This document shows positions 22,771-41,527 of a stretch of DNA of 64,000 nt, piece after piece. The notes below the pieces were generated by a model. The model did no database searches, had not been told where the DNA came from, and saw only the letters and a list, made by a program, of their open reading frames with translations. A program made the position numbers and the translations under genes. Positions within the stretch are counted from its first letter, which is position 1. Each line of letters opens with the position of its first letter. The DNA comes from Macrostomum lignano (lineage: Eukaryota): the NCBI GenBank assembly GCA_002269645.1, contig NIVC01000632.1, forward strand, positions 1 through 64,000. Direction: 5' to 3'.

Positions 22771-23544
22771 TATAGTTCAGCTGTACTTGAACAGCTTCTT
22801 CGAAAGCGACAAAGAAATATGGGCAATGTTTTGAGCAAAAGGAAGCGGGTTCTTATTGATTGCGCGATTGAGCTGCGTTTCTAGCAGTTAGCTCGGGCAG
22901 CTTTTTCCTTCAAATAGTCGCGACTCCATCAGCTTGATGTCGGAATCGCCAATTCGGACAACCGGCGGGAGGATTGGCGGAGGCTCAGCTGAGCCAATGA
23001 TAGCGCAGCCCAGGTCTGCGTGGTCCGATCCGCCTTCCCGGTGGGCTGCAGCTGTCCTGCTTTTGTTGGCGCGCGTGCTCAAGTGCAGAAAGCGCCGCGT
23101 AGCTCCGGGGAGAAGGCGAGAGGGGAAGGCATCAGGATGGTTTAGCTAGTATTGACTCTGTGCCGCATGCCTAATTGGGCTGCAGCCATGCCGCTTGCTT
23201 GCCCTTTTTGGCTTCTTACTCTGAATAGATCTACTTCGGCAAAACTTTTTGCTACTCTTCACTACTTTGATGATAATGTTTATACTCGAATAAAGCGAAG
23301 CCTGTGCATTGTGTCTGCGTACTCTATTTCTGGACAGTTGTCCACGACCTTATTTCTTCAGGAGCAAGGTAGCTCAGCGATTAAGAGCATCTGACTAATA
23401 TTTTCCCGCATTAAATAAATAAATAAACAACTTCCGGTACTTCTATTCGTAAGCTTTTGAGTCGGGCTCAATGATTCAGTCAAGGTATATCGATACTTCA
23501 AGCATGATAATATGCGTTTTTTATCCTATAACGACATGAACGCG

Positions 23545-23851
23545 AGTAGTATATAAAAAGACGCTTCTAGACCCAGAGCACTTTTTTAATTACCGTTTTA
23601 AGGGTCTAGAGGGGGGACACGGGGGGTAAATAAAAAAACACATCTAATCACCCTTAACACATCTAATCACCCATAATCACCCCTAACAATAAAAATCAAT
23701 CCCAACACTTCCAAACACTCCCCAACACCCCCCTCGCGTCCCCCCTCTTAAGACCTTAAAAACGGCCATTAAAATAAGGTCTGATCTGTAAGCGTCTTTT
23801 TCTATACTACTACTCTATAACCCCTTGCCCGCGCCGCAGGCGCGAAGGGTC
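23545..23851 (+). repeat. Polinton left TIR (~307 bp)
   Basis: Reverse complement of 41148-41452 with a handful of mismatches. Confidence 0.96.
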
Positions 23852-23868
23852 TTTTTCTGTTACTAAAA

Positions 23869-24183
23869 ATGACCCGAGTTTACACCTTTTCTGTTAGTGA
23901 TACTTTTGAGACTGTTGCTAAAAATGCAGAGATAATAAAACAACATATTTTGAATGGAATAATTGATGAAGTTTATTTAAAATATGACGACAAGCATGAC
24001 CTAAAGCTTTATCCATTAGAGCTGGATGAGATGTATGATTTAGAACAAGAGGGTGAGTTAATATTTCAACTTGGAGATTATTTAAATTCGGATGATTGGG
24101 AGGTTAGATCAACAGATTCCGAATCAACAAATAGTTCATATGAAACCAGTGATTCAGAGAATGAAAGTGAAATTTTTATGTGA
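23869..24183 (+). CDS. Polinton hypothetical acidic protein (104 aa)
   Basis: Open ORF, AAAAATG start directly after TIR. Confidence 0.7.
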   Translation: MTRVYTFSVSDTFETVAKNAEIIKQHILNGIIDEVYLKYDDKHDLKLYPLELDEMYDLEQEGELIFQLGDYLNSDDWEVRSTDSESTNSSYETSDSENESEIFM

Positions 24184-24199
24184 AAAAAATATTTAAAAA

Positions 24200-24454
24200 A
24201 TGAATTATTATTCTATAACAGAAACGACATTTATTGTGAAAAATATATATAAAAAAATGAAGGTAAATCGAACCCATGGTTCGCGTGCTTTGCACGATTA
24301 CTCCTACATCGGAAATGTGCCGATTAATGAACTTAATGAAAATTTAAGTTTGATAACAGTTGAACAAATGTCAATAATAATATTAGTAACAATTATAGTA
24401 ATAATATTGTTTTTGTTTGTTATAAAAAATTTACTACCATGTTGTCTCAAGTAA
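24200..24454 (+). CDS. Polinton small protein with C-terminal TM helix (84 aa)
   Basis: MSIIILVTIIVIILFLFVIKNLLPCC; contains an in-frame hairpin module at 24267-24298. Confidence 0.6.
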   Translation: MNYYSITETTFIVKNIYKKMKVNRTHGSRALHDYSYIGNVPINELNENLSLITVEQMSIIILVTIIVIILFLFVIKNLLPCCLK

Positions 24455-24464
24455 TTGTTCGAAC

Positions 24465-25382
24465 TTAGTTCGCTGATATTAGTTGGTTCTCATAAAACGA
24501 ACCCAATATTTCTTCACCGTCCTTATCAGCAATTATATAGGTTGTAGGATTGGTATTTAAAACTTTACTGATAGTAAATTTCTCACTTATCTTCCAATAT
24601 CCTTTTCTTCCTTTTTCAAACTTATCTTTCCATTTATAGATATAAACAGAATCACCAACCTTAAAAGATTTCTTTTTATTTTTTTCAAATTTTCCAAAAG
24701 TAACTTTAACGTTTTCAGGATTGTTATAAGCTTGTTGAGGAGTCATCTTTATAGCTGAATGATATGAATTGTTATAATCTTTCACTACGTCTGGTAATAT
24801 TTTTACCCACTTTTGGTTACCATTAAGACTAAACTGAAACCATAATTTCTTACCTAAAGTTCGATTAAATCTTTCTATTAATGCGTTTTTACTCTCTCCA
24901 TAAATAGAATAAATTTTATTAATATACTCCCCATTCGCGTCTTTTTTCCTTTCTTTTCCTTTTTCAAAATGATACAATTTATACATATGAGGATTGTAAA
25001 ATTCTTTTCCTTCATCAACACACAATCTTTCGCTTTTTTCTCCAAGACTTCTAAAAGCAGCAGCAACCTCCTCTCCCTTTTTGGATTTTAAAGGAATAGC
25101 CCACGCGTATCGAGTAAAACCATCTAATATGGTTAAGATATATTTATATCCTCTTTCGTTCGGCATCGACATTAAATCAGCATACCAAATTTCATTCTTT
25201 TTGAAGTTCATGATTTTTCTATAAAATTTAGGTTTTCGATATTCTTTATGAAGAATCTTTGCCTCATCAGAACTTAACCCACCACCACTTAATAATAAAC
25301 ACTCGACACAATTATTTCCATGTTGATTATAATTAATTCCCAAACCAAATTTAACTTTAGACTGCAAAATCTTTTTAACCAT
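24465..25382 (-). CDS. Retroviral-type (RVE) DDE integrase of Polinton; probably the C-terminal part of a PLA2-integrase fusion
   Basis: EIWYADL, YILTILDGFTRYAWAIPLKSK, CVDEGKEF, IERFNRTL (D-D-E intact), YNNSYHSAIKMTP; no chromodomain seen. Confidence 0.96.
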   Translation of the reverse strand: MVKKILQSKVKFGLGINYNQHGNNCVECLLLSGGGLSSDEAKILHKEYRKPKFYRKIMNFKKNEIWYADLMSMPNERGYKYILTILDGFTRYAWAIPLKSKKGEEVAAAFRSLGEKSERLCVDEGKEFYNPHMYKLYHFEKGKERKKDANGEYINKIYSIYGESKNALIERFNRTLGKKLWFQFSLNGNQKWVKILPDVVKDYNNSYHSAIKMTPQQAYNNPENVKVTFGKFEKNKKKSFKVGDSVYIYKWKDKFEKGRKGYWKISEKFTISKVLNTNPTTYIIADKDGEEILGSFYENQLISAN

Positions 25383-25612
25383 CCACCTAGTTAATCTTTG
25401 CCTACGATAATCCCTGCAAGTTATCTAATCCTTGAATCATTTTTTGATCGGCTTCATGTTTTAATCTTAATGCTTCCTCGGCGGGTTCTTGTCAGCATCT
25501 CTATATGCTAAGTCGTGATAGTATGCTAACCAATCAATCCCATTTATTGGAATTGAATCAGATTTTGGAGTATTGTCAGGATTTAATCGGAGATCGAGTC
25601 GAGTCAACCCGG
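25383..25612 (-). CDS. Parvovirus-type phospholipase A2 (PLA2X), 3' exon, with frameshifts
   Basis: TRLDLRLNPDNTPKSDSIPINGIDWLAYYHDLAY (catalytic HD), then EEALRLKHEADQK / MIQGLDNL in shifted frames. Confidence 0.85.
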
Positions 25613-25937
25613 CCTTTATACCTTTGCTTTCACAAAGGAGTAGACTGTGTCTTAAGCTATCATAAGGATTGACTAAGTCCTTCAAGCCCACCAGCGTACA
25701 GTCGTTGCATCTCAACCATACTCAAGTCATATGAGGTTAGGTTTTCGATTCACTCTTGCCCATATATTTATCTTCAAGCTTGTTACCGTTGGGAAGAGGA
25801 GTTACCTCTGTTCCTTTGTAATCTTTCGAAAACAAAGTGGTACTTGAAGCTTTAGGGGATTGAGTGAGCGGCTGGTGTTGCCACTAATAGTGACTAGCAG
25901 TAGCTTTGCATCTACCACTCGGCACAGCTCGAGCTCC
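25613..25937 (-). ncRNA. Group I self-splicing intron (~325-330 nt) interrupting PLA2X
   Basis: P3 CACCAGC/GCUGGUG; P4 UCACUC/GAGUGA; P6 AUC/GAU; J6/7 GCA; P7 A-(C bulge)-GACUGU/ACAGUC-U; J8/7 UAAGAC; P9 CCUUUGU-GAAA-GCAAAGG; 5' exon ends in U; candidate terminal G. Confidence 0.88.
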
Positions 25938-26063
25938 ACCCGCGAAGTTGTAAGATGGGATGTGTAATTCATTTGTATACCTTCCAGTAGTAAAGATTGG
26001 TGGTAAGCTTGTTAATCCTTTTTGAACATCTAACAATCCTCCTTCAAACACTATTTGGCTCAT
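25938..26063 (-). CDS. PLA2X 5' exon
   Basis: MSQIVFEGGLLDVQKGL...ELHIPSYNFAG, the first half of the HxPxYNxxGPGT Ca-binding loop. Confidence 0.85.
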
Positions 26064-26661
26064 TTTTAATAGCCTTAAAAATACATGAAAGCACCAATTG
26101 TTTTGCAAATTCTTCTATGGTTGGTTGTTTATCATTTTTTGAAATATTATCTACAGCAACTAAGTATCTTTTATTTCTCCAATTTTCAGACTTTTTAATT
26201 TGTTCTTCATCGCGATAATCAAAAGATGAAGCAGGAATAAAATGGTCAACATGCAAAACACCAATATAATCTTTTGGCACATAATAATGTTTTGTGAAAT
26301 TTAACCAATCAGTAAAGAATTCAATTGAGCAACCAAGGTAATCAACAGTATGATTATTTTTTCGAGCATTATTTGATTTTAGAAGAGAATATATTCTATT
26401 TCGTGTGTTTAAAATAAGTTTGTAATTTTCATCAGTTAATCTTCTTTCATTTTGATATTTTCTGCGCCTTTCTATATTATTTTTATCATATTCTTTTTTC
26501 CATTGAAGCTTATATTCACGATTTTTCTCATACCATTCTTTATCATACTTTCTCTCACAAGGTTTGCAAATACTATAATATCTATTTTGATCTCTACGAA
26601 ATCTAAAATAATCCAAAATTTTCTCTTCTTTACATTTATTACAAATTTTTGTTTCATCCAT
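26044..26661 (-). CDS. Free-standing HNH-type endonuclease (NCLDV/virophage-like) with N-terminal zinc finger
   Basis: CNKC..CKPC; YLGCSIEFF; LHVDHFIPASSFD...WRN...DNISKNDK. Confidence 0.82.
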   Translation of the reverse strand: MDETKICNKCKEEKILDYFRFRRDQNRYYSICKPCERKYDKEWYEKNREYKLQWKKEYDKNNIERRRKYQNERRLTDENYKLILNTRNRIYSLLKSNNARKNNHTVDYLGCSIEFFTDWLNFTKHYYVPKDYIGVLHVDHFIPASSFDYRDEEQIKKSENWRNKRYLVAVDNISKNDKQPTIEEFAKQLVLSCIFKAIKNEPNSV

Positions 26662-26684
26662 TTTATAAAAAATAAATTTAACAA

Positions 26685-27338
26685 TTAAACTCCAGTATGT
26701 CCAGCAGCTTTCGCAGCAGCTAAAACAAGTTTTCGCGGTGTTTTAAATCCATCACCAACAGCTGGTTTGTTATTTATAGAATTAACAATCCATTTATACA
26801 AGCTGGTATTTTTAACAGCTCCTCCTAACTCATCATAAAAAATTCTAGCACTTATTAATTCATCCCTAGTATATAAATCGGGGTTAAATTTTACCCTAGG
26901 GTTCGTAATAATATTAAATGCTCCGCCCAATTCTCTATATAGTTCATTTCGATCTTTAACAACGTTACCAATTCGATAATTACCACCACCTAAATCTGTC
27001 ACAGCAATACTAGTTGGTGCAGGTCTCGGATATTGTTCAACTCCACCCCTAATCTCTTCACGTCTAATTTCTGCAACTCTAAATATTGCTTGATCAGTCT
27101 CATAAGCAGGCGGCTCATCCAAAATTTCATCCTCTTTTGGCTCAGTATTTTTAGCAATTTTTTCCAGAAGATCTTTATCTGTTTTTTCTAGTTCACTAAT
27201 TTTCCCAGTAATAGGATTAACAAAAGGAGCAGCAAATCTTTCGCCAGCTAATTGTATTCCTAACTTTCTTTTTTGTAAATTTCTAACAAAATCAGAATAT
27301 CTTTGCTTCTCTTTATAAATCGCTAAACTCTCCATCAA
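26685..27338 (-). CDS. Polinton hypothetical protein (217 aa), ERFxxPFxNPIT motif recurrent in Polinton accessory ORFs
   Basis: Long open ORF; family assignment from memory and uncertain. Confidence 0.6.
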   Translation of the reverse strand: MMESLAIYKEKQRYSDFVRNLQKRKLGIQLAGERFAAPFVNPITGKISELEKTDKDLLEKIAKNTEPKEDEILDEPPAYETDQAIFRVAEIRREEIRGGVEQYPRPAPTSIAVTDLGGGNYRIGNVVKDRNELYRELGGAFNIITNPRVKFNPDLYTRDELISARIFYDELGGAVKNTSLYKWIVNSINNKPAVGDGFKTPRKLVLAAAKAAGHTGV

Positions 27339-27390
27339 CGTCCATAAATTGACTCATTTTTTAACATAAAAACTTTTTTAACTTAAAAAA

Positions 27391-28883
27391 ATGGCTGAAA
27401 CAAAAAACTATGTGGAGTGATAAATTTCATTTCAAAAAGCACGACAGTATATTTAATGAGGTCAGAGCAAGAGATTTAAATTATACCCTACAAAAGTGAT
27501 AATTCAAATAACTTTTACTGGACGGTAACTTTTGGACATCGGCGCAACCAACACTATATTGGATATGAAAATGCGTTTATTCCGCGTTAGATGGTTGTAT
27601 ACTAGAAATGATGGAACTGCTCTTGCAGCCGGAGATATCGCAGATCGATCCGGAATAATAATAGAAATGATTGTTTTATAAATGTTTTTCCCAAGCTCAA
27701 CTAACTGTTAATGGTGCTGAGGTTGAGACATCATCAAACCCCGCAGAGATTAATGGAGTTTTGAAACATTTAAATATACTTATTTATCAAAACAAGTTGG
27801 TGATAATGTTGGGTGGATGCCGGATAAAGGTAACGGTCAAGCAGTAGTTTTCCTAATGCTACAAAACGCAGCTGGTGCAGATACTGCAGCTCTAATTGCT
27901 TACCTTAATACAAACATAGTTCCAGTTGTAACCACTATGACTAATACAAAAGATATTAACACCGCTTTATAGATCGTCAGAATAAATTCCAGTTGCAGTT
28001 TTAACCACGGCAACGGATATGAGCAGGACTTTTCAATCTTCCGCTATTTGGGTTCTTCTCACCAAATCGGGTATGGAAAGGATTAAAATTTGGGATACAG
28101 TTGCAAATATCTGGTGGATATCAGCTAGGATACTTTATGGAACCTCAATTTCAACCGATATAGCAGTTCGTATAGATTCAATTCAATTAGTCGTACCAAC
28201 TATTGAGGTAACAGCCCCACTTTTAAAACACATCGATAATCAGTTAACGCATGATCAGGAAATATTTTATTTGAATCGTCGACATTTTATGCGAACCATT
28301 AATAATAACAGGATTCATTCCAGTGGCAAATACTGACATCAAAACGTCGGGTGAGATATATTTTTGTTTGGTTTAAGATAACAAATAGAAGGAGTAAAAG
28401 AGCAAATGGGGATTTATATTGGCTTCAATCCGGTGCCATAGCAGAACAAGCAGCCACCGCAACAGACAATGCGGCTGCAGCTATTAACGAGTTTAATGTT
28501 CAGAATATCCGCCTGCAGGTTGATGATCAATATTATCCGGTTAAAGACCCCTAAATTTAAATATAGCAAATAATAATGTTAATGATTTTATAAAATATTA
28601 TCAAGATTATGCTAAAAATGAAGCGTATGCCGTCCCTCAGTACACACCCACAGAGTTTCTAAACATTCATCCAGTGGTTGTTTATGATCTAACGGCACAG
28701 AAAGAAAACGTAGCCAATATTGGACTTAATTATATGTTAGAGATTAATAAAACCGGTAATCAGGCACTTGACGCCCACGTATTGTTTCTAGAGGAATATA
28801 TGTCAATTGCTAAAGCTGATGGCACGATTGTTCGGGACGCGCACTTTAGTGTCGCAGTGCAAAGCACGTCGCCCCCGCTGTAA
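27391..28883 (+). CDS. Major capsid protein (double jelly-roll), broken by several frameshifts
   Basis: Pieces across frames: VTFDIG, QAQLTVNGAEVE, IRLQVDDQYYP, YTPTEFLNIHPVVVYDLTAQKE; ~1.5 kb length and position fit MCP. Confidence 0.8.
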
Positions 28884-28931
28884 GCGGTGCAGGTCTCCGA
28901 CCGTCGCGCCTATTTAAATTTTTCTTTAAAA

Positions 28932-29687
28932 ATGGTAAAGGCAAAACACGATAAGATATTTCCAAATGATCCTTTTCTTTGTTTAGTAATCGGAGGATCA
29001 GGTAAAGGAAAAACACACTTTGTTTACGATTTATTAACAACAGATGGAATGTTAGACTATAATAATTTAATAATTTATACTAACAAACCTAGAATAAAAT
29101 ATTATGAATTTCTTAAACATGGATTAAAAAACAAATTAAAAAAGATGTCTTGTTTAGAATGTTAAGAGCATATGAGCAATATGAGGATGATGACGAACCG
29201 CGATTTACACTCGATGACATTGAGGATTTATGTAAAACAATGGCACAACAACCAGAAAACATCACCGAACGAGCCCCCAACTGTTAGAGTATCAACCCGA
29301 TTAGCCTATGATCAAATTCCAAAACATGATAAAACACTAATTATTTTTGATGATTGTATTAATGACGGTGATCAAGAATTGCAAAAGGAAATTTTTGTTA
29401 GTGGTAGAGGAGATGGAATTGGAGCTTTTTATCTAACACAGTCCTTTAGAGAATTAGAATCGATTATAAAAAAGAATGCAAGTTGTTGTGTAATGTTTGA
29501 TTTAGATAATTATGATTTACAAAATATACACGCTAGATTTAATCCTGGGTTGGATACAAAACAATTTAAAAGCTTGTGTAAAAAAATTTGGGATGATAGC
29601 CAATACAAACATATATATATCAACCCAAGGTTAGAAAGGAAAAATCGAATCTTAAAAGATCTGATGAAAGAGGACGATGAGGATTAA
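28932..29687 (+). CDS. A32/FtsK-type packaging ATPase, one frameshift near 29160
   Basis: Walker A GGSGKGKT; Walker B LIIFDD; FVSGR; YLTQS. Confidence 0.92.
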
Positions 29688-29702
29688 TTTCCCACTATAA
29701 AA

Positions 29703-30487
29703 ATGACTACAAATTTAAATACTATAAAACAATTGGTAGATCGAACTAATTCAAAATTTAGTACAACCTTACAGTTTATAATGACAACCAGTGAACAACG
29801 TATTCAATTGCGCGACCCGTTACAACTTGATCAAAGCCTAAGTTATCAAATAGGTTTGATACTATTTTCGGTTTTTAACATGCCTCAATTAATTAATGCA
29901 ACAAATAATCAATTTAGATATTCTAAAGATTCCGGAGCCAATTGGACAACATTTAGCGTTAACCCAGGAGCGTATTCCTATACCGATTTGAATGCTTATA
30001 TAGAAGGAGAATTAACAACTAATGGAGATTGGGTATCAGGCGCAATTGTTATAGGGGTTGATTTACCATCTGGCAGATTCACACTATCACTAGGATCCGG
30101 ATATCAGGTTGATTTCACAATTGCAAATTCACTCAGAACCATACTTGGATTTAATTCCCGAATCGTTACCACATCAAGCACCGGCGATACTGTTGGAAAT
30201 ATTGAGGGTGGTGTTAATACAATTAATATTACAACCGACATATCAAACGGCGGTTATATAACAGATAATAATGGAGTTTTGGTTCAACGTGGAATTATTT
30301 ATTCAATCCCATTTCTTGCTGTTCCAATTGGAGAGAAAATGATTGTTTCACCCAAACCCCAATATATTATCCTTTAAATCAATATAGTGTTCAATCAATT
30401 TATATTAGGATTGTAGATGAAAGCGATAGATTAATAAGTTTTGGTGGGCAGTCAATAACAATAATTTTACGTATAAAACAGGTTTAA
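29703..30487 (+). CDS. Minor capsid protein (penton, single jelly-roll), frameshift near 30370
   Basis: NNQFRY, PGAYSYTDLN, IYSIP..VPIGEK; shifted C-terminus PLNQYSVQSIYIRIVDESDRLISFGGQSITIILRIKQV. Confidence 0.85.
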
Positions 30488-30497
30488 TATTGTAAAA

Positions 30498-30668
30498 ATG
30501 GGTAACAATAGTTTAAAAAAACAAACGGAAAAAGTTCAAAATGCAAAGGATAATTATGAAATCGAACTAACAAAATTGAAACAACTGCAAGCAGAAAAAA
30601 TCCGAAAGGAACTGTTAAAATCCAAACCAACGAAACTAACCAAAACCAAGAGTTTTTCAGGAACATAA
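30498..30668 (+). CDS. Small 56 aa basic coiled-coil ORF starting MGNNS (possible N-myristoylation)
   Basis: Below the ORF-track cutoff; AAAAATG start; fills the gap between mCP and protease exactly. Confidence 0.5.
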   Translation: MGNNSLKKQTEKVQNAKDNYEIELTKLKQLQAEKIRKELLKSKPTKLTKTKSFSGT

Positions 30669-30669
30669 A

Positions 30670-31106
30670 ATGACTATGAATTGGCAGTTGTTCAAACAAA
30701 GATATGGAACAGACACAACAAGCAATATTGAATTAACAAATTGGGCGCGACAACTAAAAATAAAACCATTCAGATGTGTTATGCGAGATGAGATCAAAGA
30801 CTTACCACAATATGGATCTTTCATTGTTAATATTGAAACAACAAAAGAAAACGGGGTTCATTGGTCAGCAGTTTATTCAAAACCTAAACTTGTTTATTTT
30901 TTTGATTCATACGCGCTTCCTCCGTTACAGGAAATAAAAGATAAATTTAATCATACTAAAAATCGTTTATGTGGAGATCATCATGAACAATTTCAAACAT
31001 TTGACAAAAGTTATTGCGGGCAAGCGCGTTGTATTTTTTATATAAAATTAATAACTCTAAGGAAAGACCCGAAGCATTTAAAGCAATTTTAGATTCTATA
31101 AAATAG
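30670..31106 (+). CDS. Adenain-like cysteine maturation protease (C-terminal frameshift)
   Basis: GVHWSAV (His), YFFDSY (Asp), FQTFDKSYCG (Gln, Cys). Confidence 0.9.
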
Positions 31107-31116
31107 ACAGTAAAAA

Positions 31117-33047
31117 ATGTTATTTTCTGGAACACCCTCATGGAACGGAACAACAAGTACTGGTGGAGGCGCATCTGGTGGAATAAGTGTTACATTCGGA
31201 GATAACCGATATATTAATGAAGATGAAGGTTATAAAAAAACTGAAATTGATAATAAACTAAATTTGAAACGGAATGTTGCAGATTCCTATACCAAAACTC
31301 AAATAGATGATTCATTAAATTTAAAACGCAATACAGCCGATTCTTATACCAAAACGAAGTTGATAATTCCCTAAATTTAAAACGGAATGTTGCCGATTCT
31401 TATACCAAAACTGAAGTTGATAATTCCCTAAATTTAAAAAGAAATATAACTGATTCTTATACCAAAACTGAAGTTGATAATTCCCTAAATTTAAAAAGAG
31501 ATATAACTGATTCTTATACCAAAACTGAGGTTGATAATTCCCTAAATTTAAAACGGAATGTTGCCGATTCTTATACCAAAACCGAAGTTGATAATTTAGT
31601 TGGAGGTGGAGCCCCAAAACAGGATCGATTCCAAACGGTTGAAACCGGACACGTACCAACTATGGCAGCTTGGAGTGGAAATGGTTTTGCAATATCCGCA
31701 AGCACAGCATTTAATACAACCGATTTTGCAAGTTGGAAAGCGTTTGATGGTAATGATTCAACAGATTGGGCAACAAATAATACTCAAACTGATTATTGGA
31801 TTCAAGTCCAATGTCCATCCGCGATAATGTGTTATAAAATTGATTTACGTGGGAGACCATCACCATCAACCGAACACCCAGCATCATGGCGATTTGAGGG
31901 CAGTAATGACAATACGAGCTGGGATGTTTTAATACCGGCTGGCAGTTCTGTAGAAATAAATAACTCAACTCAAACAATTAATGTCACACAAAATTTTGAT
32001 AAAACATATTCATATTTCAGATTGTTCTGTCTTACATCAACATCGGGTTCTACCAACCCCGGCTTATCAACTTTTCAGATTTATAGACAGACTTTTACAA
32101 TTCTTGATTTAAATTTGGGAGTTGTTAATCAATCAATTGATATGGGTGGTAACACAATTACTAACATATCTACTATAAACAATAACAGTTCTGTTGTTAC
32201 TAAAGGTTATGTTGATACGCGAGTAACCCAAACGGCAGATGGCCGAATGTCTTTTAACGATAAAATAAAATTGGATGGCATACCGGCAATTGATGCCGCT
32301 TTGTACGAACCCGTAATTTGCAATTGGACTGGGTATCAAAATCCAACCACTGCCGGCGATATTTTTCCAACAGGAAGTTTCGTTGGCGACGCTTCTTATA
32401 TCGATTATCAAAATGGAGCTAGAATTACTCGTGAAACCTCAGGTGTAAGTGGTGCTTTACAATTTAATTTCACCCATTTTCGTAATATATCCGCCTCCTT
32501 CTATTTCCGAGTTGCTAATGCTACAGGAGATGGTGCTGACGCTGTTTGGTTTTATGCATACTGTCATGAACGACCAACAAGTGAATTTGGAACTGGATTA
32601 ACAACCGACGCCGGCTTGATAGTGTTTGCGAGTGAATGGCATGACAGAGTTGGGGTTCTTTGGAGTAATAAAAAATCAGACGGAGCAACAGTTCGTAATG
32701 ATGTTCTTAATGACGCCGATCAAACGATAACTTATGCAAATATTGATAATGGCGATTGGCATTTATTTGAAATTAATATTTTAAATCAAAGAGTTTGGTA
32801 TCAATTAAGATCATACAATGTTTCAACCAAAGTTTATACACTAATTGGGCAAAACTTTTTTACATATGATAGCGGAACTTGGGGAGAGTTGGATAAAACA
32901 GGAACTCTTATGGGGTTTGGTGCTCGAACTGGAGGATCGGATGCTGCACATTTTATTCGTGGTGCCGCCGTTTGTGGTAGCACATCAGCAGGCTATGATT
33001 TTGCTGCGACCGCATATTTGGAACAACCACCCACACAGATCAGCTAA
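31117..33047 (+). CDS. Fibre/spike-like protein: 19 aa DSYTKTEVDNSLNLKRNVA repeats, F5/8 discoidin domain, MGGNTITN..TKGYVD stalk, L-type lectin domain; frameshifts near 31350 and 31620
   Basis: 57 bp repeats at 31339, 31395, 31452, 31509, 31566; WKAFDG..WIQVQ..SWRFEGSND..W; GADAVWF...GFGARTGG...HFIR. Confidence 0.78.
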
Positions 33048-33116
33048 TGCTGCGACCCTACGGGCGATCGCCTAAGGCGCGGACTTCGTCCGATCAGTTA
33101 AATATTTCTATATAAA

Positions 33117-33416
33117 ATGGCTTTTAGTAGAACTCCATCGATGCGGCAAAATAATGTTATTATTCCTATTCCTAAACAAGAATCAAATATAAAAACATTC
33201 AAATCTCATACCAAATTTTTATTTAGTACTGTAAATGTTCAGGATAATAAGAAGCTTCAAGAATTAATTAAGTTATTAAAAAATCATATTATACTTCAAG
33301 AGTTTTGGAAAATAGGATTTAAATGGGAGAAAAAAGAAAGAATCACTCCAATACAATACCTATTGAGCTCGGGACAAATCCCAAAGAGCGCGGGGAATTC
33401 ATTTTGGTGCTATTAA
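33117..33416 (+). CDS. Polinton hypothetical protein (99 aa)
   Basis: Open ORF with TATAAAATG start. Confidence 0.55.
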   Translation: MAFSRTPSMRQNNVIIPIPKQESNIKTFKSHTKFLFSTVNVQDNKKLQELIKLLKNHIILQEFWKIGFKWEKKERITPIQYLLSSGQIPKSAGNSFWCY

Positions 33417-33428
33417 AAATAGACGAGA

Positions 33429-34067
33429 ATGTCGGTATCTGAAGCAGATAAATGGGAACGCGACCGGTTCAACCAACGTAAAGGTCAGATGTTAAGTAAT
33501 GTTGATCGTATTAACTATGATTATGATTTATATACTAAAAAAGTAAGAAGAGTTTCAAACCATATAAGAAATATGGACTTTTTCAATATTGGATTTGGAA
33601 GCTTATCAATGTTATGTGTAATCGTTTTAGGTATTTTACAATCTATTCCAACTCTTAATTTATCTCAATTATTTTTAGGTATTTCAATTGGCTCAATATC
33701 AGGTTTTGAATTGATCAGAAACTTATCAATACTTTTAGCAATTAAATTATATCTTAAAAAAAGAAAGGAAAAATATAAATCATTAAGAGATGTTGCCAAG
33801 CAATATAAAAATCAGTTATATTTATATGTGCAAAAAATATTGGATGACGGAGAGATAACGATTCATGAATTATCAACCGCGGTTGAGTTATATGAAAAAT
33901 ATTTAAAAGATAGAAATAGAATTTTAGATGTTGAAACTTTTACCGATATGGAATTAAAAGAGTTGAGACTCGATAAACCCAAAGCTCCACCGATAGAAAC
34001 ATTAGGCATTTACGAACCTGAAACTATTGCTACTGGGCACAAAGCCCGCGGTCAGGAAGTGCGGTAG
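33429..34067 (+). CDS. Two-TM membrane protein with helical tail (ILDDGEITIHE motif)
   Basis: Hydrophobic segments at ~50-75 and ~80-108 aa followed by a K/Y-rich helix. Confidence 0.7.
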   Translation: MSVSEADKWERDRFNQRKGQMLSNVDRINYDYDLYTKKVRRVSNHIRNMDFFNIGFGSLSMLCVIVLGILQSIPTLNLSQLFLGISIGSISGFELIRNLSILLAIKLYLKKRKEKYKSLRDVAKQYKNQLYLYVQKILDDGEITIHELSTAVELYEKYLKDRNRILDVETFTDMELKELRLDKPKAPPIETLGIYEPETIATGHKARGQEVR

Positions 34068-34564
34068 AACTTCAGGTTGTTTAGTTTTTCTAATGCATAT
34101 GTTATATATTCTTCCCAAAGTGGTAACTCTCTTCTGATCCTAGGTTTAAATTTTTTATCAATACATAAAAATTCCAATGACTTTTTCAGTAACATTTCGT
34201 TAGGTATGTTACCTATCCTTATAAACTTTGTATTCTCTCGAATAAGAAAATTGAAATAATATCCAACTAAAATTAAAATCCTTTCGGAGTCTTTCGAACT
34301 TAATCCCTTTCCTTTATTTAAATGGAAAAAGTTATTATATAAATAAACATTATTTCCGGGAATTAAAATTGGATCAGAAATGTCTCTTGTAAGATTTCTT
34401 AAAATTGTATTTTTAAAATAGTAATATGAGTTTTCAATCTTTTTTGTTTTTTCAAATTGATATATTTTAGAACATGAATAACACATATGATATATATCTC
34501 CGTTTGCTGTTTGCCCTCTGTGCATAGTCACATTACATTTATTACATTCGTAAATGTCTTTCAT
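34052..34564 (-). CDS. Hypothetical protein with N-terminal zinc ribbon (170 aa)
   Basis: CNKC...CYSC. Confidence 0.65.
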   Translation of the reverse strand: MKDIYECNKCNVTMHRGQTANGDIYHMCYSCSKIYQFEKTKKIENSYYYFKNTILRNLTRDISDPILIPGNNVYLYNNFFHLNKGKGLSSKDSERILILVGYYFNFLIRENTKFIRIGNIPNEMLLKKSLEFLCIDKKFKPRIRRELPLWEEYITYALEKLNNLKFYRTS

Positions 34565-34590
34565 TTTTTTGTTATTTTTTTAGATTAAAA

Positions 34591-34923
34591 ATGGAGAGCT
34601 GGTTCAAAACCGATTCTAATGTGATTAATTATCTCACACCCAATATGTTGGAGAATAAAGAATATAATATTATATGTTTGAGACAGGTTAAATTTATTGG
34701 GCTTCAATCAATATTTTTACAATTAGATGGGCAAAAAATTTTATGTCTAAGCGGAGATGATGTTAAAAATTTTCCTGTTTTAGTTATTAATAAACCTAAA
34801 GCGTTTGTTATGAAATACTGCAACGAGGGTGGATTGCAATTTAAACTAAAACAAACAAATAATAAAAAGAGTGATAGGACTGTAAAATTGGCGGCTGTTT
34901 GGGAGGATGACGACGAAGACTAA
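34591..34923 (+). CDS. Hypothetical protein with acidic tail (110 aa)
   Basis: Open ORF, AAAAATG start, ends WEDDDED. Confidence 0.65.
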   Translation: MESWFKTDSNVINYLTPNMLENKEYNIICLRQVKFIGLQSIFLQLDGQKILCLSGDDVKNFPVLVINKPKAFVMKYCNEGGLQFKLKQTNNKKSDRTVKLAAVWEDDDED

Positions 34924-34938
34924 ATTTTTTATAAGAAA

Positions 34939-35274
34939 ATGGATACGATAAAAATCCTTATCACTAAAGAGCGTGAACTTAATGATATTAATAAAAAAAT
35001 AAATATAATTATATCTCAGAAATATCATGAGTATGGGGACGATATGTTTCCCATCCGATATGAAATGGATAAAAGAAAACGTTTTATTAAATCTGCAATT
35101 GCTTATGCTGAAACAGTAATTGAAATCGAAATAGATAGGTTGGTTAGAAAAATAAAAAAACTTAGGAAAAAAATAAAGGATTGTTTAAGTTACCCTGACG
35201 ACTGCGAGGAAATTGGCCTTCAATATTATATGAAATCGAAATGGATATTATGCTTAAACAATTACATGCTTTAG
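34939..35274 (+). CDS. Hypothetical helical protein (111 aa)
   Basis: Open ORF, AAAATG start. Confidence 0.6.
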   Translation: MDTIKILITKERELNDINKKINIIISQKYHEYGDDMFPIRYEMDKRKRFIKSAIAYAETVIEIEIDRLVRKIKKLRKKIKDCLSYPDDCEEIGLQYYMKSKWILCLNNYML

Positions 35275-35302
35275 TTTTTTCCGCCCCGAAGGGTCGCGGA
35301 TT

Positions 35303-38300
35303 TTATCCGATAAGTAATTTTTCTGTTAATCTCTTCCAGTTATTCAAGACTTTTTCCTTATTTAATTTTTTAAGTTCTTTTGGAAATGTTGAATAATAAT
35401 TATCTATATCTTTTTCATATTCTAGAAATGTATTATATTCACAATCACATTCGGATTCACAATCACAATCGTAATAATAATTATTTATTGCCGCTTTGTA
35501 TTCATTATATTTACTTATTATATCTTCTTTTTGTTTTTTATCTTTTATCATATTTTTTATCTCTTCTTTTAAACCATATGGATATGTTTTAATTTTATCA
35601 TCTAAATATCTTTTATCATCAAATGGACTTAATGTTTTTTTATCTGTCTCGATGACAAACATCTGATGCTTATCTGAATTTAATCGATATTGTGGAGCAT
35701 GATAATTTTCAATTGTATTAAGGTAATCTAAAAGTACGTTTTTATAATCATCAAATGTTATCTTTTTAACTGCTGCCCTTGATACCCCTTTTATTTTTTT
35801 TACCTCTCCCTCCTGTCCTAAAACTTTAAATGCATAGCATTTTGATCTTATTGCTATAAACTCGGTTATGATTTTGCTATTTAATTCATCTTTCATTTTA
35901 AGTACAACTTTTTTATTTTGATCTGATTTTAAAGGATGGTTATCCGGATAGTCGGAGGTATCCAATGTATCCTTAATTTTTTCCATATCTTTATAGACAT
36001 CGAACCTTTGGTTCGCGGGCTTTGCCCGATCCTCTGTTTCAACCTTAAATACCAAACTGTCGGTGTCTGCATATATTGGATAGTTATCTGGCCATGTTTT
36101 ATTTATAACATCATAATAATATTCATACATTACCAGCTTTGCATAATCTAAAACAACCATTCCAATAAATATTGGTTTAAGAAATTTTGTTGTTTTATTT
36201 CTCATATGAATACCCATAAAGTTATCATCAAATTTTATAAAGTCTTTAAAGTTAGGTTTTGAGAAATATTTCTTTGCTTTATCAATATCCTTTTCTAAAT
36301 GGAATTGGGTTCTATCTCTAATATTTTCAACCGTTTTTCCATAAAAAGCATTATTCATTAATTTCCAATAATCTTTCTCAAAATTTGTTTTTGACATCTG
36401 TCTCTGATTTGAATTAAAATCAATATATTTAGCTAACCAATCTTCCTCAATAAACGATATTGTTCGATGTACTTTAGACACTTTTAATCCCTGCTTTTCA
36501 TAAAATTGTAGAAGCTTATAATGCACTACATAGTTTTTCTTATCATGTAAATTTAATATTAATTTTTTTGTTGCTAGATGTTTTGCATTATCTACTTTAA
36601 GATAATCTTTTTGTGTTTGTGATAAATCATCTTCATTAACTGAACAATGCTCTGGAGCTAAAGGATATTTATATGTTTTTGCTTTTGCTTCCCGAGTATA
36701 TTGCAAATCCACCTCTACAATACAGCCCCTTCCTTCGGGAATATTTTTGTAATAATCGGGGTCATCTTCCCATTGGAAATCAGCTATTGGTAATTTTTGT
36801 TTCATACAACCACCGTATAAATTGTTTGCATCTAGATATAATACATATGATGATTTTTCTTTTTTATTATAATTTGGTAGATATTTATTATTTACTTTAG
36901 TATATCTATCTCCTAGTACACCCGAGAATCCGCCGCGAATTCCTCTCTCAATCATTAACAACATATCATGATCAGTTAGTAAATCAATCTTAACATCTGT
37001 ATGTTTCAAACCACAAGCCCATGTTAATCCCGGTGCACTGAAACAATATGCGGGATCAATTTTAAAATTCTCATATGTATGATTCCTAAAGTTTTCAAAT
37101 GCATCAGCTAATAGGAGAACATCTGCTTTAAGATATAGATTATGATAATCTTTAAATGTTTTACAATTAAAGTATTTCCATACTTTTTGAGCGTGTTCAT
37201 AATCCGATTCACTTATATTTGATTGTGATAATGTGGAATAAAACTTTTCTATGGGCGGTAATTCGGTATGAAAAAATACGTCTTCAGATGTTACATATTC
37301 ATATGGATAGATGCCCTTACGAGTTAATAGCATTAGTTCTTCCTCGGATAGTTTTTCTTTTTTGAAACGATTCAATAGTATTGGAAAGTTTTTCTTTACT
37401 ATTTCTAAATCCCATGGTTTTGGAACTAATGATGAAACAACATTTGCTAAAGATGTTGATAAGAATCTCAAGGAATCTAGAAAAACTAGATGGGAGTATT
37501 TCTTACCATATGTTATTGATATGTAATTTTCTGATGTTTTAGGTAATATATTTATTTCATATTCATCCTTTCCTAAATGAAGCAATTCTCGAACTAAGAA
37601 ATGAAAATCATATCCGGAACCATTATGAAAAAATACTGGTATTTCCTTACATCCTTTTCCTTCTTTTGCATTACATGATCTACATGCTGCCCCTCGATAA
37701 TTTCCTGTTAGATGACAATGTTCTCGTATCTTATTATTCTTACTTAAATGTCTTTTGCACATAAAACAATTTGTTGCATTTTTATAATTGTCTCTATCCT
37801 TATTTGTCATATTAATATTTTTTGATAATTTATCATATTGATTTTGAATATATTCAAATACATTTACTAATGATTCTGCCATGTGCTTAGCTGCATCATT
37901 ACCGTGGTAAGTAATCATCCTTGATTTAAATATATGATCAGCTACAGAGTGTACATATATACAATAACTATTCGGAAACTGTTGTGCCAATTTTTTTGTG
38001 CATTCGTCCCGTAGGGTCGCGTGCTTTGCACGATCCCCATCATCAGATGCCGTCTGTGATTCTTTTAAGGGAACATTTGTTGCTTCAAAATCAGCATATA
38101 TTACTATTGGTTTTTTAACTGCCATATAATGTTGTTGGAACTTTAGGGTTGCATCTTCAGATGCTGGCATTATAGCATTAGTAAATTTGTGATCTAAACA
38201 AAATCGTTGGTGGTTTTTAAGAGCTGTTTCATCCTTTTTAAATGTAAAACAATTTCTACATAGTGGATATCTATTTCTATTTTCTCTTAAAAAAGAACTA

Positions 38301-39286
38301 ATATCTTTTATGTATATATAATGTGTTTCATTTTCGCGCTGCATGTACAAAAGATCGATTTGATCTGGTGCTGTTATATCAGTTGCTGGCTTAACAAGAT
38401 AACACCTTTTCTTATACCATTCTGGATCGGTTAAAATTTCTTCTAGATCTTTTGGTTCTTCAATTGTAAACACATTAATATTTAAACCATTCATTTTTTC
38501 AATCTTATATATATCATCTATTGCTACTGGGTATGATATGTTTTTCATTATTATTTCATCCTCATATTGTCTATAATTATATATTTTATTAATGTGTGAT
38601 TCTACTTGATTGTGATATTTATGAATTAATAAACACCATAATAAACATTTATTATCTTTATTGTCTGGATTTATAATCATAGGTGATTTAAATTTGAGCT
38701 TCATATGTGATCGTCCTTTAAGAATTTCAATAGGAACAATCTTTACTATTGCTGAATTACAGGATACAAATATAAACCCAGATCCGTTTTCTGTCATCTT
38801 ATCTATCCATTCATCAAACTCAGCTTCTATTTGATCGAATTGATTGTTGTAATTTCCCATTGATAATAATGTTTTATATGATTCTTGTGAAAAGTTATTT
38901 ATTACTTCAATTTCTGAATTTGCATTAAGAATATTTGGTTTTTTAAATTCTGTTTCAACTTCTATTTTATACTTAATTGGCTGTCGTTTGTTATTTGGCC
39001 TTATAGTATAATTGATTAATATGGTCTTTAATTTATCTTTCATTTGTTTAAAATATTCTTTATAATTTGTATTTATATCTATATCTATATATATTACTTC
39101 AGCTCCATTTTGTCCTTGTGGTTGGAGGTTATCAATATCATTTAATTGTCTTTCTAAACGTATCTCATTTTCTGCCCTAATTCTTGCTTCTATTTCAGCC
39201 CTATCGGCAATTCGTTGTGCTTCGATTTGAGCTATTAATTGTGCTCTAAGTTCAGGGTTGTCGATTTGAGCTAAAATTGCTTCCAT
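35303..39286 (-). CDS. pPolB: Protein-primed family B DNA polymerase (1327 aa) with C2H2 finger and endonuclease VII-like zinc domain
   Basis: Exo motifs IYADFE, FFHNGSGYDFH, YLKADV; Pol motifs YLDANNLYG, KLMNNAFYGK, YADTDS; uninterrupted ORF. Confidence 0.98.
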   Translation of the reverse strand: MEAILAQIDNPELRAQLIAQIEAQRIADRAEIEARIRAENEIRLERQLNDIDNLQPQGQNGAEVIYIDIDINTNYKEYFKQMKDKLKTILINYTIRPNNKRQPIKYKIEVETEFKKPNILNANSEIEVINNFSQESYKTLLSMGNYNNQFDQIEAEFDEWIDKMTENGSGFIFVSCNSAIVKIVPIEILKGRSHMKLKFKSPMIINPDNKDNKCLLWCLLIHKYHNQVESHINKIYNYRQYEDEIIMKNISYPVAIDDIYKIEKMNGLNINVFTIEEPKDLEEILTDPEWYKKRCYLVKPATDITAPDQIDLLYMQRENETHYIYIKDISSFLRENRNRYPLCRNCFTFKKDETALKNHQRFCLDHKFTNAIMPASEDATLKFQQHYMAVKKPIVIYADFEATNVPLKESQTASDDGDRAKHATLRDECTKKLAQQFPNSYCIYVHSVADHIFKSRMITYHGNDAAKHMAESLVNVFEYIQNQYDKLSKNINMTNKDRDNYKNATNCFMCKRHLSKNNKIREHCHLTGNYRGAACRSCNAKEGKGCKEIPVFFHNGSGYDFHFLVRELLHLGKDEYEINILPKTSENYISITYGKKYSHLVFLDSLRFLSTSLANVVSSLVPKPWDLEIVKKNFPILLNRFKKEKLSEEELMLLTRKGIYPYEYVTSEDVFFHTELPPIEKFYSTLSQSNISESDYEHAQKVWKYFNCKTFKDYHNLYLKADVLLLADAFENFRNHTYENFKIDPAYCFSAPGLTWACGLKHTDVKIDLLTDHDMLLMIERGIRGGFSGVLGDRYTKVNNKYLPNYNKKEKSSYVLYLDANNLYGGCMKQKLPIADFQWEDDPDYYKNIPEGRGCIVEVDLQYTREAKAKTYKYPLAPEHCSVNEDDLSQTQKDYLKVDNAKHLATKKLILNLHDKKNYVVHYKLLQFYEKQGLKVSKVHRTISFIEEDWLAKYIDFNSNQRQMSKTNFEKDYWKLMNNAFYGKTVENIRDRTQFHLEKDIDKAKKYFSKPNFKDFIKFDDNFMGIHMRNKTTKFLKPIFIGMVVLDYAKLVMYEYYYDVINKTWPDNYPIYADTDSLVFKVETEDRAKPANQRFDVYKDMEKIKDTLDTSDYPDNHPLKSDQNKKVVLKMKDELNSKIITEFIAIRSKCYAFKVLGQEGEVKKIKGVSRAAVKKITFDDYKNVLLDYLNTIENYHAPQYRLNSDKHQMFVIETDKKTLSPFDDKRYLDDKIKTYPYGLKEEIKNMIKDKKQKEDIISKYNEYKAAINNYYYDCDCESECDCEYNTFLEYEKDIDNYYSTFPKELKKLNKEKVLNNWKRLTEKLLIG

Positions 39287-39369
39287 TTTATAGAATAAAA
39301 TTTATATAATGTTTGAATTATTGATTTTTTAATTTTGCGTTTTTGGTGTCCAGACCCTCCCCCAGGAGC

Positions 39370-40364: not shown

Positions 40365-40374
40365 TTTTATATTG

Positions 40375-40773
40375 TTAAAATTTCTTTAATCCTTTTCCAC
40401 CTTTAATAGTATTTAACATTTTATTAAAATCCTGAATATCTTTATTACTTATTGGCGTGGTTTTCGTGGGGGTTTCTGTTGGTTGTGCGGCTTGTGCCAG
40501 CTTTTAATCTTTTATTGCATTTATTTGTGAGAGGGTGTCGTTAAAATCTCTCAATTTCTTTAGTTCTTCTGCCGCTCTAGCTGCTTCAATTCCTCCTTTT
40601 ACAGCATTTGTTATAGAGCCTGCTGCAGAGCCAGCTTGCCCTATAAGCCCCATATTGTCTTTAACAAAATTTGCTGCTGTTCCAACCAAATCAAAAAGTC
40701 CCTCACCTCGGTATTCAATTGGATCTCCTACCTGATACTCATTTATATTTTGCACATGTGTAACGTGTGTCAT
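40375..40773 (-). CDS. pVI-like virion protein (GxG site followed by amphipathic helix), frameshift near 40500
   Basis: YRGEGLFDLVGTAANFVKDNMGLIG; shifted C-terminus ...NTIKGGKGLKKF. Confidence 0.55.
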
Positions 40774-41147
40774 TTTTTGTTCTATTTTTAGTAACAGAAA
40801 AAAAGAATACGAGAACACACAAAAGAATATTTTTCAACCCAAGATGGTGTATATACTGCATTGAGTCATTTTTTTCTGGACGTCCAGAATTTTTCTGGAC
40901 GATTTGTTAAAAACTTATTCATTGATGGTGGGCACCCCATTTTACTTGTGACGCGCGGAGCCTGTCTTCTTCTTCCTGAGAGATGAGCTAGAACTGGGTT
41001 GATGGCTGTGGTTTTTATAGAGTTGGATGGCTGAGTGGGCGTTCAATTCCTGCTACGGCAAGATTTTGCAAGCTAGCCAATAGTGGCTATGAGAGTAATT
41101 TTTTGTTGAGTGTTACTATTACCATGACTCAGTTTAAACTCTTTTGT

Positions 41148-41452: not shown

Positions 41453-41527
41453 CCTGCACTACACAGAAGAGGAGCCCGCAAAAGTAAGTGATCACTTTAT
41501 TTTGTTCCCAGGCTTAAGTGTCTGGAA

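What the first reader, a model, noticed from the sequence alone, without database searches (positions are those of the whole stretch)
25608..25937. Group I self-splicing intron in a protein-coding gene of an animal nuclear Polinton
Seen on the minus strand: the PLA2 Ca-loop motif is split, YNFAG then ~325 nt with stops, then (PG)..TRLDLRL..HDLAY. The insert has the full ribozyme core in the right order: P2 GGUAG/CUACU; P2.1 GUCACU/AGUGGC; P3 CACCAGC (25877-25871)/GCUGGUG (25695-25689); P4 UCACUC (25867-25862)/GAGUGA (25755-25750); J4/5 AA and J5/4 CAA; a P5 extension with CUUCAAG/CUUGAAG and a GAG-GUAA-CUC tetraloop; P6 AUC/GAU; J6/7 GCA; P7 GACUGU (25703-25698)/ACAGUC (25648-25643) with an A-U pair and bulged C at the G-binding site; P8 GGCU/AGCU; J8/7 UAAGAC; P9 with a GAAA tetraloop. 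The 5' exon ends in U (25938). The terminal G is uncertain: 25613 gives GPG but needs a nearby indel fix; 25608 gives in-frame FAG-LTRL with a 4 bp P10; 25614 gives in-frame FAG-AGLTRL. Known: group I introns occur in protist/fungal rDNA, organelles, bacteria, phages and some giant viruses; in animals they are known from mitochondria of early-branching groups. Inference: a ribozyme hosted by an animal endogenous virus, splicing an mRNA without the spliceosome.
Basis: partly seen in the sequence, partly recalled or inferred. Interest (0 to 1): 0.97.

Follow-up and report, generated by a model that had tools for sequence, protein, structure and literature searches.

The report
Group I intron in Polinton integrase gene
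A roughly 325-base self-splicing-type (group I) intron really does interrupt the phospholipase-like front end of the integrase gene of an integrated Polinton-like virus element, next to a phage-type HNH nuclease gene, but such introns are already reported in protist Polinton-like viruses and an animal host is not shown.

Summary
On the minus strand, Rfam RF00028 (group I intron) matches 25954-25621 over the full model. The score is 43 bits, E 1.3e-9, below the curated cut-off of 50, and the hit is lost in larger scans.

Uninterrupted relatives read straight through the insertion point (...YNFAG|PGT...), and all 55 aligned family members are contiguous there. In relatives the PLA2-like domain (Pfam PF08398) is fused to an rve integrase, and the window's copy is collinear with them.

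A 205-aa phage-type HNH/endonuclease VII gene lies immediately upstream. This suggests an intron plus free-standing homing endonuclease unit; that link is inferred.

This copy is partly decayed: four in-frame stops in the PLA2/integrase frame and one in the packaging ATPase. P1 is weak and the terminal G is unsettled.

'Animal' is not established. A flanking IMP4 exon is equally distant from human and plants. RF00028 introns were reported in 2025 in integrated Polinton-like viruses of protists.

The parts
23544..41453 (.). Integrated Polinton/Maverick-like element, about 17.9 kb, GC 0.33 against 0.46 in the flanks
   Evidence: Terminal inverted repeats. GC step. Genes for pPolB, rve integrase and an A32-like ATPase. 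No target-site duplication seen.
23544..23851 (.). Left terminal inverted repeat
   Evidence: two arm pairs, 189 nt at 97% and 111 nt at 100% complementarity.
41148..41453 (.). Right terminal inverted repeat
24465..26063 (-). PLA2-like (PF08398-type) / rve integrase gene, interrupted by the intron. It is broken in this copy: four in-frame stops in the frame shared with uninterrupted relatives, and possibly one frameshift, depending on which terminal G the intron uses.
   Evidence: tblastn of uninterrupted relatives: P0184 (397 aa) covers 24561-26033 in two pieces split only by the intron, 61% identity. P0184 has PF08398 plus rve. rve in the window ORF. Stop count.
25613..25937 (-). Group I intron, ORF-less. 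These are the bounds favoured by protein homology and a 2-bp P9.0. The cmscan envelope is 25954-25621.
   Evidence: RF00028, 43 bits, E 1.3e-9, model 1-253. Helices verified. Exon 1 aligns to P0028 residues 3-35 and the downstream ORF to 38-76.
25871..25877 (-). P3 5' strand (pairs with 25689-25695)
   Evidence: 7/7 Watson-Crick.
25862..25867 (-). P4 5' strand (pairs with 25750-25755)
   Evidence: 6/6 Watson-Crick, fully compensated relative to the Rfam consensus.
25698..25703 (-). P7 5' strand with the presumed G-binding G-C pair (25703-25643). Pairs with 25643-25648. J8/7 lies just upstream of the 3' strand.
   Evidence: 6/6 Watson-Crick. The J6/7-P7 and J8/7-P7 stretches align to the conserved Rfam consensus.
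25621..25637 (-). P9 hairpin with GAAA tetraloop
26044..26661 (-). Free-standing HNH / endonuclease VII-type gene (205 aa, intact ORF). Its end overlaps the start of the intron-bearing gene by 20 nt.
   Evidence: PHROGs phrog_1035 endonuclease VII E 1.7e-11 and phrog_2255 HNH endonuclease 5.3e-8. tblastn to 38 phage records at 26-34% identity, annotated endonuclease VII / HNH endonuclease.
35303..39286 (-). Protein-primed DNA polymerase B (1327 aa) with an inserted Endonuclease_7/HNH domain (aa 491-553)
   Evidence: Homologues at 27-37% identity, many carrying PF02945 and a few PF03175.
28887..29687 (+). A32-like packaging ATPase gene, broken by one in-frame stop
   Evidence: Two same-frame ORFs match Pox_A32 profile positions 10-55 and 96-172. 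Stop count.
31662..33047 (+). 461-aa protein with an N-terminal F5/8 type C (discoidin) domain
   Evidence: PF00754, E 1.5e-11.

Best explanation
The insert is a genuine ORF-less group I intron of about 325 nt. Its anatomy is IC-like: P2, P2.1, an extended P5, and GNRA loops in P5b and P9. It sits in the sense strand of the PLA2-like/rve-integrase gene of an integrated Polinton-like element. It lies in the codons of the most conserved motif of the PLA2-like domain, between ...FAG and PGT....

Proposed mechanism (inferred, not shown):
1. In the transcript the P3-P9 core folds.
2. A free guanosine bound at the G-C pair of P7 attacks after the U that ends exon 1.
3. The terminal G then takes the same site.
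4. The exons are ligated, giving the uninterrupted motif seen in relatives.

The phage-type HNH endonuclease gene directly upstream is most simply read as the intron's mobility partner. It would cut insert-free copies of the gene in co-replicating elements, and the intron would protect its own copy ('collaborative homing'). This link rests on adjacency only.

This genomic copy is partly decayed, so the intron here is probably a well-preserved relic of an element that was active not long ago, given its 97-100% matching TIRs. The host is a eukaryote of unresolved lineage.
For: - RF00028 full-length match, E 1.3e-9.
- P3, P4 and P7 are perfect helices, and the other helices are recovered by unconstrained folding.
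- The conserved J6/7-P7 and J8/7-P7 sequence is present.
- The strand is the same as the gene's.
- U precedes the insert and G ends it at the homology-defined bounds.
- Exon 1 aligns to P0028 residues 3-35, ending exactly at FAG. The downstream ORF aligns from residue 38.
- All 55 aligned family members are contiguous over the junction, which is the most conserved stretch: G 96%, P 91%, T 98%.
- Uninterrupted relatives P0184 and P0186 are collinear with the window apart from the insert.
- Two close relatives have ORFs that begin or end exactly at the junction. P0026 is 96% identical to P0186 from the Pro onward. P0097 is 91% identical to P0184 up to FAG. This hints at alleles with and without the insert.
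- HNH ORF identity.
- The literature reports RF00028 introns of 309-376 bp in integrated Polinton-like viruses (PMC12220804).
Against: - The score is below Rfam's gathering cut-off (43 against 50), and the hit disappears in larger scans.
- P1 is weak and ambiguous. cmscan's P1 is 7 nt off the homology-defined junction.
- The terminal G that reproduces the relatives' motif does not leave the frame open as the sequence stands.
- The gene frame carries four in-frame stops, so selection for splicing may have ceased.
- There is no RNA evidence and no covariation evidence, because DNA of relatives was not fetched.
- The HNH-intron link is adjacency only.
- No nucleotide similarity to any phage record.
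Confidence: 0.75

Rival explanations
1. It is a dead relic. The insert descends from a group I intron but no longer splices, in this copy or in this lineage, and it contributes to inactivating the gene.
For: Weak P1. The register at the 3' end is unsettled. Four in-frame stops in the host gene and one in the ATPase show decay. The score is below the gathering cut-off.
Against: Every core helix is intact, with no mismatch in P3, P4 or P7. The TIRs match at 97-100%, so there has been little time for decay.
Confidence: 0.35
2. It is an ordinary spliceosomal intron, or an unrelated insertion, that merely resembles a ribozyme.
For: A GT...AG pair near the two ends could give an in-frame product with three extra residues (read). 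The host has spliceosomal introns: its IMP4 gene is split.
Against: E 1.3e-9 against a structure-aware model, with the full model aligned. No other gene of the element shows an intron. The GT-AG product does not reproduce the family motif.
Confidence: 0.04
3. The HNH gene is unrelated to the intron. It could be an independent selfish endonuclease or a genome-processing nuclease of the element, with the intron spreading, or having spread, by other means such as reverse splicing or a lost intron-encoded enzyme.
For: Free-standing HNH genes occur in Polinton-like viruses without introns (PMC12220804). The polymerase carries its own, unrelated HNH insert. No target-site evidence exists.
Against: The gene abuts the intron-bearing gene about 110 nt from the insertion site. 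This is the same layout as known pairs of an ORF-less intron and a free-standing endonuclease in phages.
Confidence: 0.4

Closest known systems
RF00028 group I introns in integrated Polinton-like viruses of protists (Rhodomonas lacustris cluster C3, Paulinella micropora, Desmodesmus armatus; PMC12220804)
   Same: The element class is the same: rve integrase, TIRs, and a GC content well below the host's. The intron size range matches (309-376 bp), it is ORF-less, and it interrupts a gene seen as roughly 50-aa ORFs. The window's two exon ORFs are 42 and about 48 aa.
   Different: In that report the host gene is unannotated and lies just upstream of the capsid gene. Here it is identified as the PLA2-like domain of the integrase gene, with an HNH gene beside it. 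Whether these are the same intron lineage was not tested, and the window's host is unknown.
Collaborative homing in phages: ORF-less psbA group I intron with the adjacent free-standing endonuclease F-CphI (Zeng, Bonocora and Shub 2009; Bonocora and Shub 2009; both listed in the references of PMC11296320; the details are from my own knowledge)
   Same: An ORF-less group I intron in a conserved coding site, with a free-standing phage-type HNH endonuclease gene next to the interrupted gene.
   Different: No cleavage or target-site evidence exists here. The carrier is a eukaryotic Polinton-like element.
Tetrahymena-type (IC1) nuclear rDNA introns (comparison from my own knowledge)
   Same: P2 and P2.1, an extended P5, a J8/7-P7 sequence close to the consensus, and a bulged nucleotide next to the G-binding pair.
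   Different: This intron is in an mRNA rather than rRNA. It is shorter, with no P9.1/P9.2. The subgroup was not tested with subgroup models.
Group I introns in giant-virus protein genes (for example the RNA polymerase gene; PMC10675990)
   Same: A group I intron, associated with endonuclease genes, inside an essential gene of a eukaryotic DNA virus.
   Different: There the endonuclease ORFs lie inside the intron, and the carrier is a giant virus.
Parvovirus VP1-type PLA2 domain, and PLA2X of Alpha adintoviruses (PMC8502044, PMC3671162)
   Same: The Pfam family is the same (PF08398) in uninterrupted relatives. The HD catalytic motif and the G-x-G loop are present.
   Different: Here the domain is fused to an rve integrase, not to a capsid protein or a pX-like domain.

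Membership tests
Group I intron (Rfam RF00028) | Covariance-model score at or above the curated gathering score | tested here: not met
   43 bits against 50. E 1.3e-9, full model 1-253. No hit at gathering threshold.
Group I intron (Rfam RF00028) | Conserved core P3-P4-P6-P7-P8 with the P3/P7 pseudoknot order | tested here: met
Group I intron (Rfam RF00028) | G-binding G-C pair in P7 with an adjacent bulge, and conserved J8/7 | tested here: met
   Sequence at 25705-25698 / 25648-25642 and the J8/7 alignment. Binding itself is not testable here.
Group I intron (Rfam RF00028) | 5' exon ends in U, paired with G in P1 | tested here: inconclusive
   U25938 is present. The best P1 options are 5 bp with a 3-nt loop, or 3 exon bp. 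cmscan places P1 7 nt upstream.
Group I intron (Rfam RF00028) | Terminal G at the 3' end | tested here: inconclusive
   A G is present at each of three candidate ends. Homology and a 2-bp P9.0 favour 25613.
Group I intron (Rfam RF00028) | Insert-free homologues are contiguous at the site | tested here: met
   P0028, P0184, P0186, and 55 of 55 aligned family members.
Group I intron (Rfam RF00028) | Guanosine-dependent self-splicing | not testable with these tools
   No RNA data available.
Polinton / Maverick-like element | Protein-primed PolB, rve integrase and terminal inverted repeats | tested here: met
Polinton / Maverick-like element | Capsid genes, maturation protease and packaging ATPase | tested here: inconclusive
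   Only weak A32-like ATPase matches. No capsid or protease family match.
Polinton / Maverick-like element | Target-site duplication (usually 5-6 bp) | tested here: not met
   The flanks at the TIR ends do not match.
Parvovirus-type PLA2-like domain (PF08398) | Profile match above the cut-off, with the G-x-G loop and HD motif | tested here: inconclusive
   The window's two exon ORFs give no Pfam hit when searched separately. Uninterrupted relatives pass: 38, 43.8 and 34.1 bits against a cut-off of 23.9. HD is present in the window. The exons were not joined.
HNH homing endonuclease | HNH/EndoVII-fold nuclease | tested here: met
   PHROGs and phage tblastn matches. No Pfam or PDB sequence hit.
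HNH homing endonuclease | Cleaves the insert-free allele near the insertion site | not testable with these tools
   Adjacency only.
Animal endogenous virus (adintovirus-type Polinton) | Host genome is an animal | tested here: inconclusive
   Flank genes found: IMP4, an FMO-like gene, and weak ANF_receptor/NCD3G matches. IMP4 is about 50% identical to human and 46-49% to plants and a red alga.

The most novel reading that the evidence does not exclude
The flanks belong to an animal. If so, this is a group I ribozyme, paired with a free-standing homing endonuclease gene, carried into an animal nuclear genome by an endogenous Polinton. It would be the first group I intron in a nuclear protein-coding gene of an animal, and it may still be able to splice.
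Probability: 0.25. Interest if true: 0.85.

Novelty: new member of a known kind. Interest (0 to 1): 0.55.

Why it matters
- It ties a ribozyme-type intron to a named gene and a precise, highly conserved site in a Polinton-like element. The only earlier report gives counts of Rfam hits in an unannotated short gene.
- It adds a candidate mobility partner, the adjacent HNH gene. It also brings to light a PLA2-like/integrase fusion that I did not find described in the papers I read.
- It shows that gathering-threshold Rfam scans and long-window scans miss such introns, so they may be under-counted in eukaryotic virus-like elements.
- If the host proved to be an animal, it would extend group I introns to animal nuclear DNA.

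Tried and rejected
- A second intron carrying the HNH ORF: no RF00028 hit in 25930-26800.
- More introns in gaps of the element: none in 27340-28340, 28300-29250 or 30350-31700.
- Stop-codon reassignment as the cause of the in-frame stops: rejected. All three stop types occur, and the 1327-aa polymerase ORF is open.
- Kinship between the HNH ORF and the polymerase's HNH insert: none.
- Nucleotide similarity of the intron to phage records: none.
- A second copy of the element in the window: none.
- Naming the host: Pfam on 50 flank ORFs, PDB searches and one protein search gave IMP4, an FMO-like gene and transposase fragments, but no lineage. The ORF behind the weak ANF_receptor/NCD3G hits was not located.
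- Cluster look-up for source names: no names or accessions.
- NCBIfam on element ORFs: nothing useful.
- P1 search: no convincing helix at any candidate U.

Full report
**1. Observation**

All of this is on the minus strand. An ORF ends ...LHIPSYNFAG with a U at 25938. About 325 nt with stops in the frame follow. The sequence then resumes as ...TRLDLRLNPDNTPKSDSIPINGIDWLAYYHDLAY.

The Rfam gathering scan of the whole window finds nothing. An E-value scan of 25450-26100 finds RF00028 (group I catalytic intron) on the minus strand at 25954-25621: 43 bits, E 1.3e-9, model positions 1-253 of 253, not truncated. An 18-kb scan of the element loses the hit because the speed filters are stricter for longer input. 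The match is therefore statistically strong, but it is below the curated cut-off of 50 and easy to miss.

- P3 has 7 Watson-Crick pairs, P4 has 6 and P7 has 6, with no mismatch.
- P2, P2.1, a long P5 extension, P6, P8 and a P9 hairpin with a GAAA loop fold on their own. They also appear in the centroid of an unconstrained fold of the whole insert (z = -2.0).
- The J6/7-P7 and J8/7-P7 stretches align to the conserved consensus of the family.

**2. What is interrupted**

I searched each exon by reference and did not join them. That step is left out.

The ORF downstream of the insert found three proteins. One, P0028 (90 aa), is uninterrupted:
- Exon 1 (26063-25938) aligns to its residues 3-35 and stops exactly at FAG, at 58% identity.
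- The downstream ORF aligns from residue 38, at 72% identity.
- Residues 36-37 of P0028 are PG.
- P0028 matches Pfam PF08398 (phospholipase A2-like domain, the parvovirus VP1 type) at 38 bits against a cut-off of 23.9, over residues 25-76, which spans the junction.

A search of 1.84 billion representatives with P0028 gave 693 relatives at E up to 0.001. I aligned 55 of them. All 55 are contiguous, with no gap or extra residue, across the junction. This is the most conserved part of the family: G 96%, P 91%, G 71%, T 98%.

Cluster mates show the full gene:
- P0184 (397 aa) and P0186 (227 aa, on a 13-kb contig) run from the PLA2-like domain straight into an rve integrase core.
- P0184 has PF08398 plus rve plus rve_3.
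- tblastn puts P0184 on window 24561-26033(-) in two pieces separated only by the insert, at 61% identity over 394 columns. P0186 aligns at 65%.

So the host gene of the intron is the element's PLA2-like/integrase gene, 24465-26063(-), and not a stand-alone PLA2.

**3. Hints of alleles with and without the insert**

- P0026 (48 aa) is 96% identical to the uninterrupted P0186, but it begins exactly at the Pro that follows FAG. P0027 begins at the same point.
- P0097 (42 aa) is 91% identical to P0184 and ends exactly at FAG.

These look like exon ORFs of insert-bearing relatives. They could also be fragments at contig ends. Deciding needs their DNA, which I did not fetch (section 8).

**4. Splice sites**

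Protein homology places the exon-1 end at U25938. The codons for F-A-G are kept in frame.

At the 3' end, the G at 25613 is followed by codons for P-G as in relatives. It is preceded by two bases that can pair with J7/9 to form a P9.0. This is my reading. With that end, however, the reading frame as it stands is not continuous with the conserved downstream part. I do not take this further.

P1 is weak at every candidate U. cmscan's own P1 is 7 nt upstream of the homology-defined junction.

**5. Neighbours and the element**

Directly upstream lies an intact 205-aa ORF, 26044-26661(-). Its end overlaps the start of the intron-bearing gene by 20 nt.
- It matches PHROG families annotated endonuclease VII (E 1.7e-11) and HNH endonuclease.
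- It matches 38 phage records at 26-34% identity.
- It is unrelated to the HNH insert of the polymerase.
- It is not inside a second intron.

The layout is an ORF-less intron with a free-standing HNH gene beside the interrupted gene. It recalls collaborative homing in phages. Here that is an inference from adjacency only.

The element spans 23544-41453:
- It is bounded by inverted repeats of about 310 nt that match at 97-100%.
- Its GC is 0.33 against 0.46 in the flanks.
- It encodes a 1327-aa protein-primed polymerase with an Endonuclease_7 insert. That architecture is described for Polintons of oomycetes and terrestrial nematodes (10.1101/2023.08.22.554363).
- It also encodes an A32-like ATPase and a discoidin-domain protein.
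- No target-site duplication is visible.

- PLA2-like/integrase gene: four in-frame stops, no frameshift seen by tblastn, and possibly one at most, depending on the intron's terminal G.
- ATPase gene: one in-frame stop.
- The stops are of mixed types, so a variant genetic code is not the cause.

**6. Host**

The flanks are dense in minisatellites. They carry a split IMP4 gene, an FMO-like exon and transposase fragments, so the host is a eukaryote with spliceosomal introns.

The IMP4 exon is about 50% identical to human IMP4 (my count) and 46-49% identical to plant and red-algal proteins. Because it is equally distant from both, it gives no support for an animal origin. Weak ANF_receptor/NCD3G matches could not be located.

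PLA2-like genes are typical of animal adintoviruses (PMC8502044). On the other side, discoidin-domain genes, rve integrases, a GC gap of about 14% and RF00028 introns are all described for integrated Polinton-like viruses of protists (PMC12220804). I put an animal host at roughly one in four to one in three.

**7. Comparison with what is known, and novelty**

PMC12220804 (2025) reports RF00028 introns in integrated Polinton-like viruses of Paulinella micropora (53), Rhodomonas lacustris cluster C3 (44) and Desmodesmus armatus (2). The introns are 309-376 bp, in an unannotated gene of about 50 aa. The kind is therefore known.

New here:
- the identity of the interrupted gene and the exact site;
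- the PLA2-like/integrase fusion;
- the adjacent HNH gene;
- the fact that the hit falls below the gathering cut-off.

I file it as a new member of a known kind. If the host is an animal it would be considerably more notable.

**8. Steps left out, and a slip**

The finding calls this an animal endogenous virus, and I cannot tell whether the relatives are virus-like elements of animals. This leaves the covariation test and the direct check of insert-bearing relatives undone.

Slip: while working I reasoned briefly about where the junction register and one of the stops lie relative to relatives. No change that would undo a break is recorded, and nothing was deleted.

Noticed in passing
window 24465-26063 (-); relatives P0184, P0186: In uninterrupted relatives a parvovirus-type PLA2-like domain is fused to the N-terminus of an rve integrase. 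I did not see this architecture described in the papers read.
   Followed up: partly
window 37628-37816 (-), within the polymerase ORF 35303-39286: Endonuclease_7/HNH domain inserted in the protein-primed polymerase. Many of its 27-37% identical homologues share it. It matches the 'pPolB2 with HNH' type reported for oomycete and terrestrial nematode Polintons.
   Followed up: partly
window 31230-31596: A 57-nt unit (19 codons) repeated 6.5 times, just upstream of the discoidin-domain gene. It could be a repetitive fibre-like coding segment.
   Followed up: no
window 27339-28886 (+): A 1.5-kb stretch of the element with only short ORFs and no family or Rfam match. It is possibly a decayed gene. 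No capsid gene was identified anywhere in the element.
   Followed up: partly
window 28887-29687 (+): The A32-like packaging ATPase is read as two same-frame ORFs separated by one in-frame stop.
   Followed up: yes
window 23538-23545 and 41452-41459: No target-site duplication flanks the TIR ends, which is unusual for an rve-integrase element with near-identical TIRs.
   Followed up: partly
window 1-23500 and 41500-64000: The host flanks are packed with minisatellite arrays (units of 14-57 nt, arrays up to 1.5 kb). One stretch, 42995-44550, is strongly strand-skewed and CT-rich.
   Followed up: no
window 53806-55332 (-), 51394-52026 (-), 57976-58263 (+), 994-1386 (+): Host genes and transposon fragments: a two-exon IMP4 (Brix) gene, an FMO-like exon, a KDZ transposase fragment and an HTH_23 domain ORF.
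   Followed up: partly
window 41185-41214 / 41426-41455: An inverted repeat inside the right TIR, which gives a weak, meaningless miRNA-family hit. The TIR can fold back on itself.
   Followed up: no
window 25450-26100 compared with 23400-41600: The same RF00028 match is reported in a 651-nt scan but lost in an 18-kb scan. Routine scans would miss introns of this kind.
   Followed up: yes
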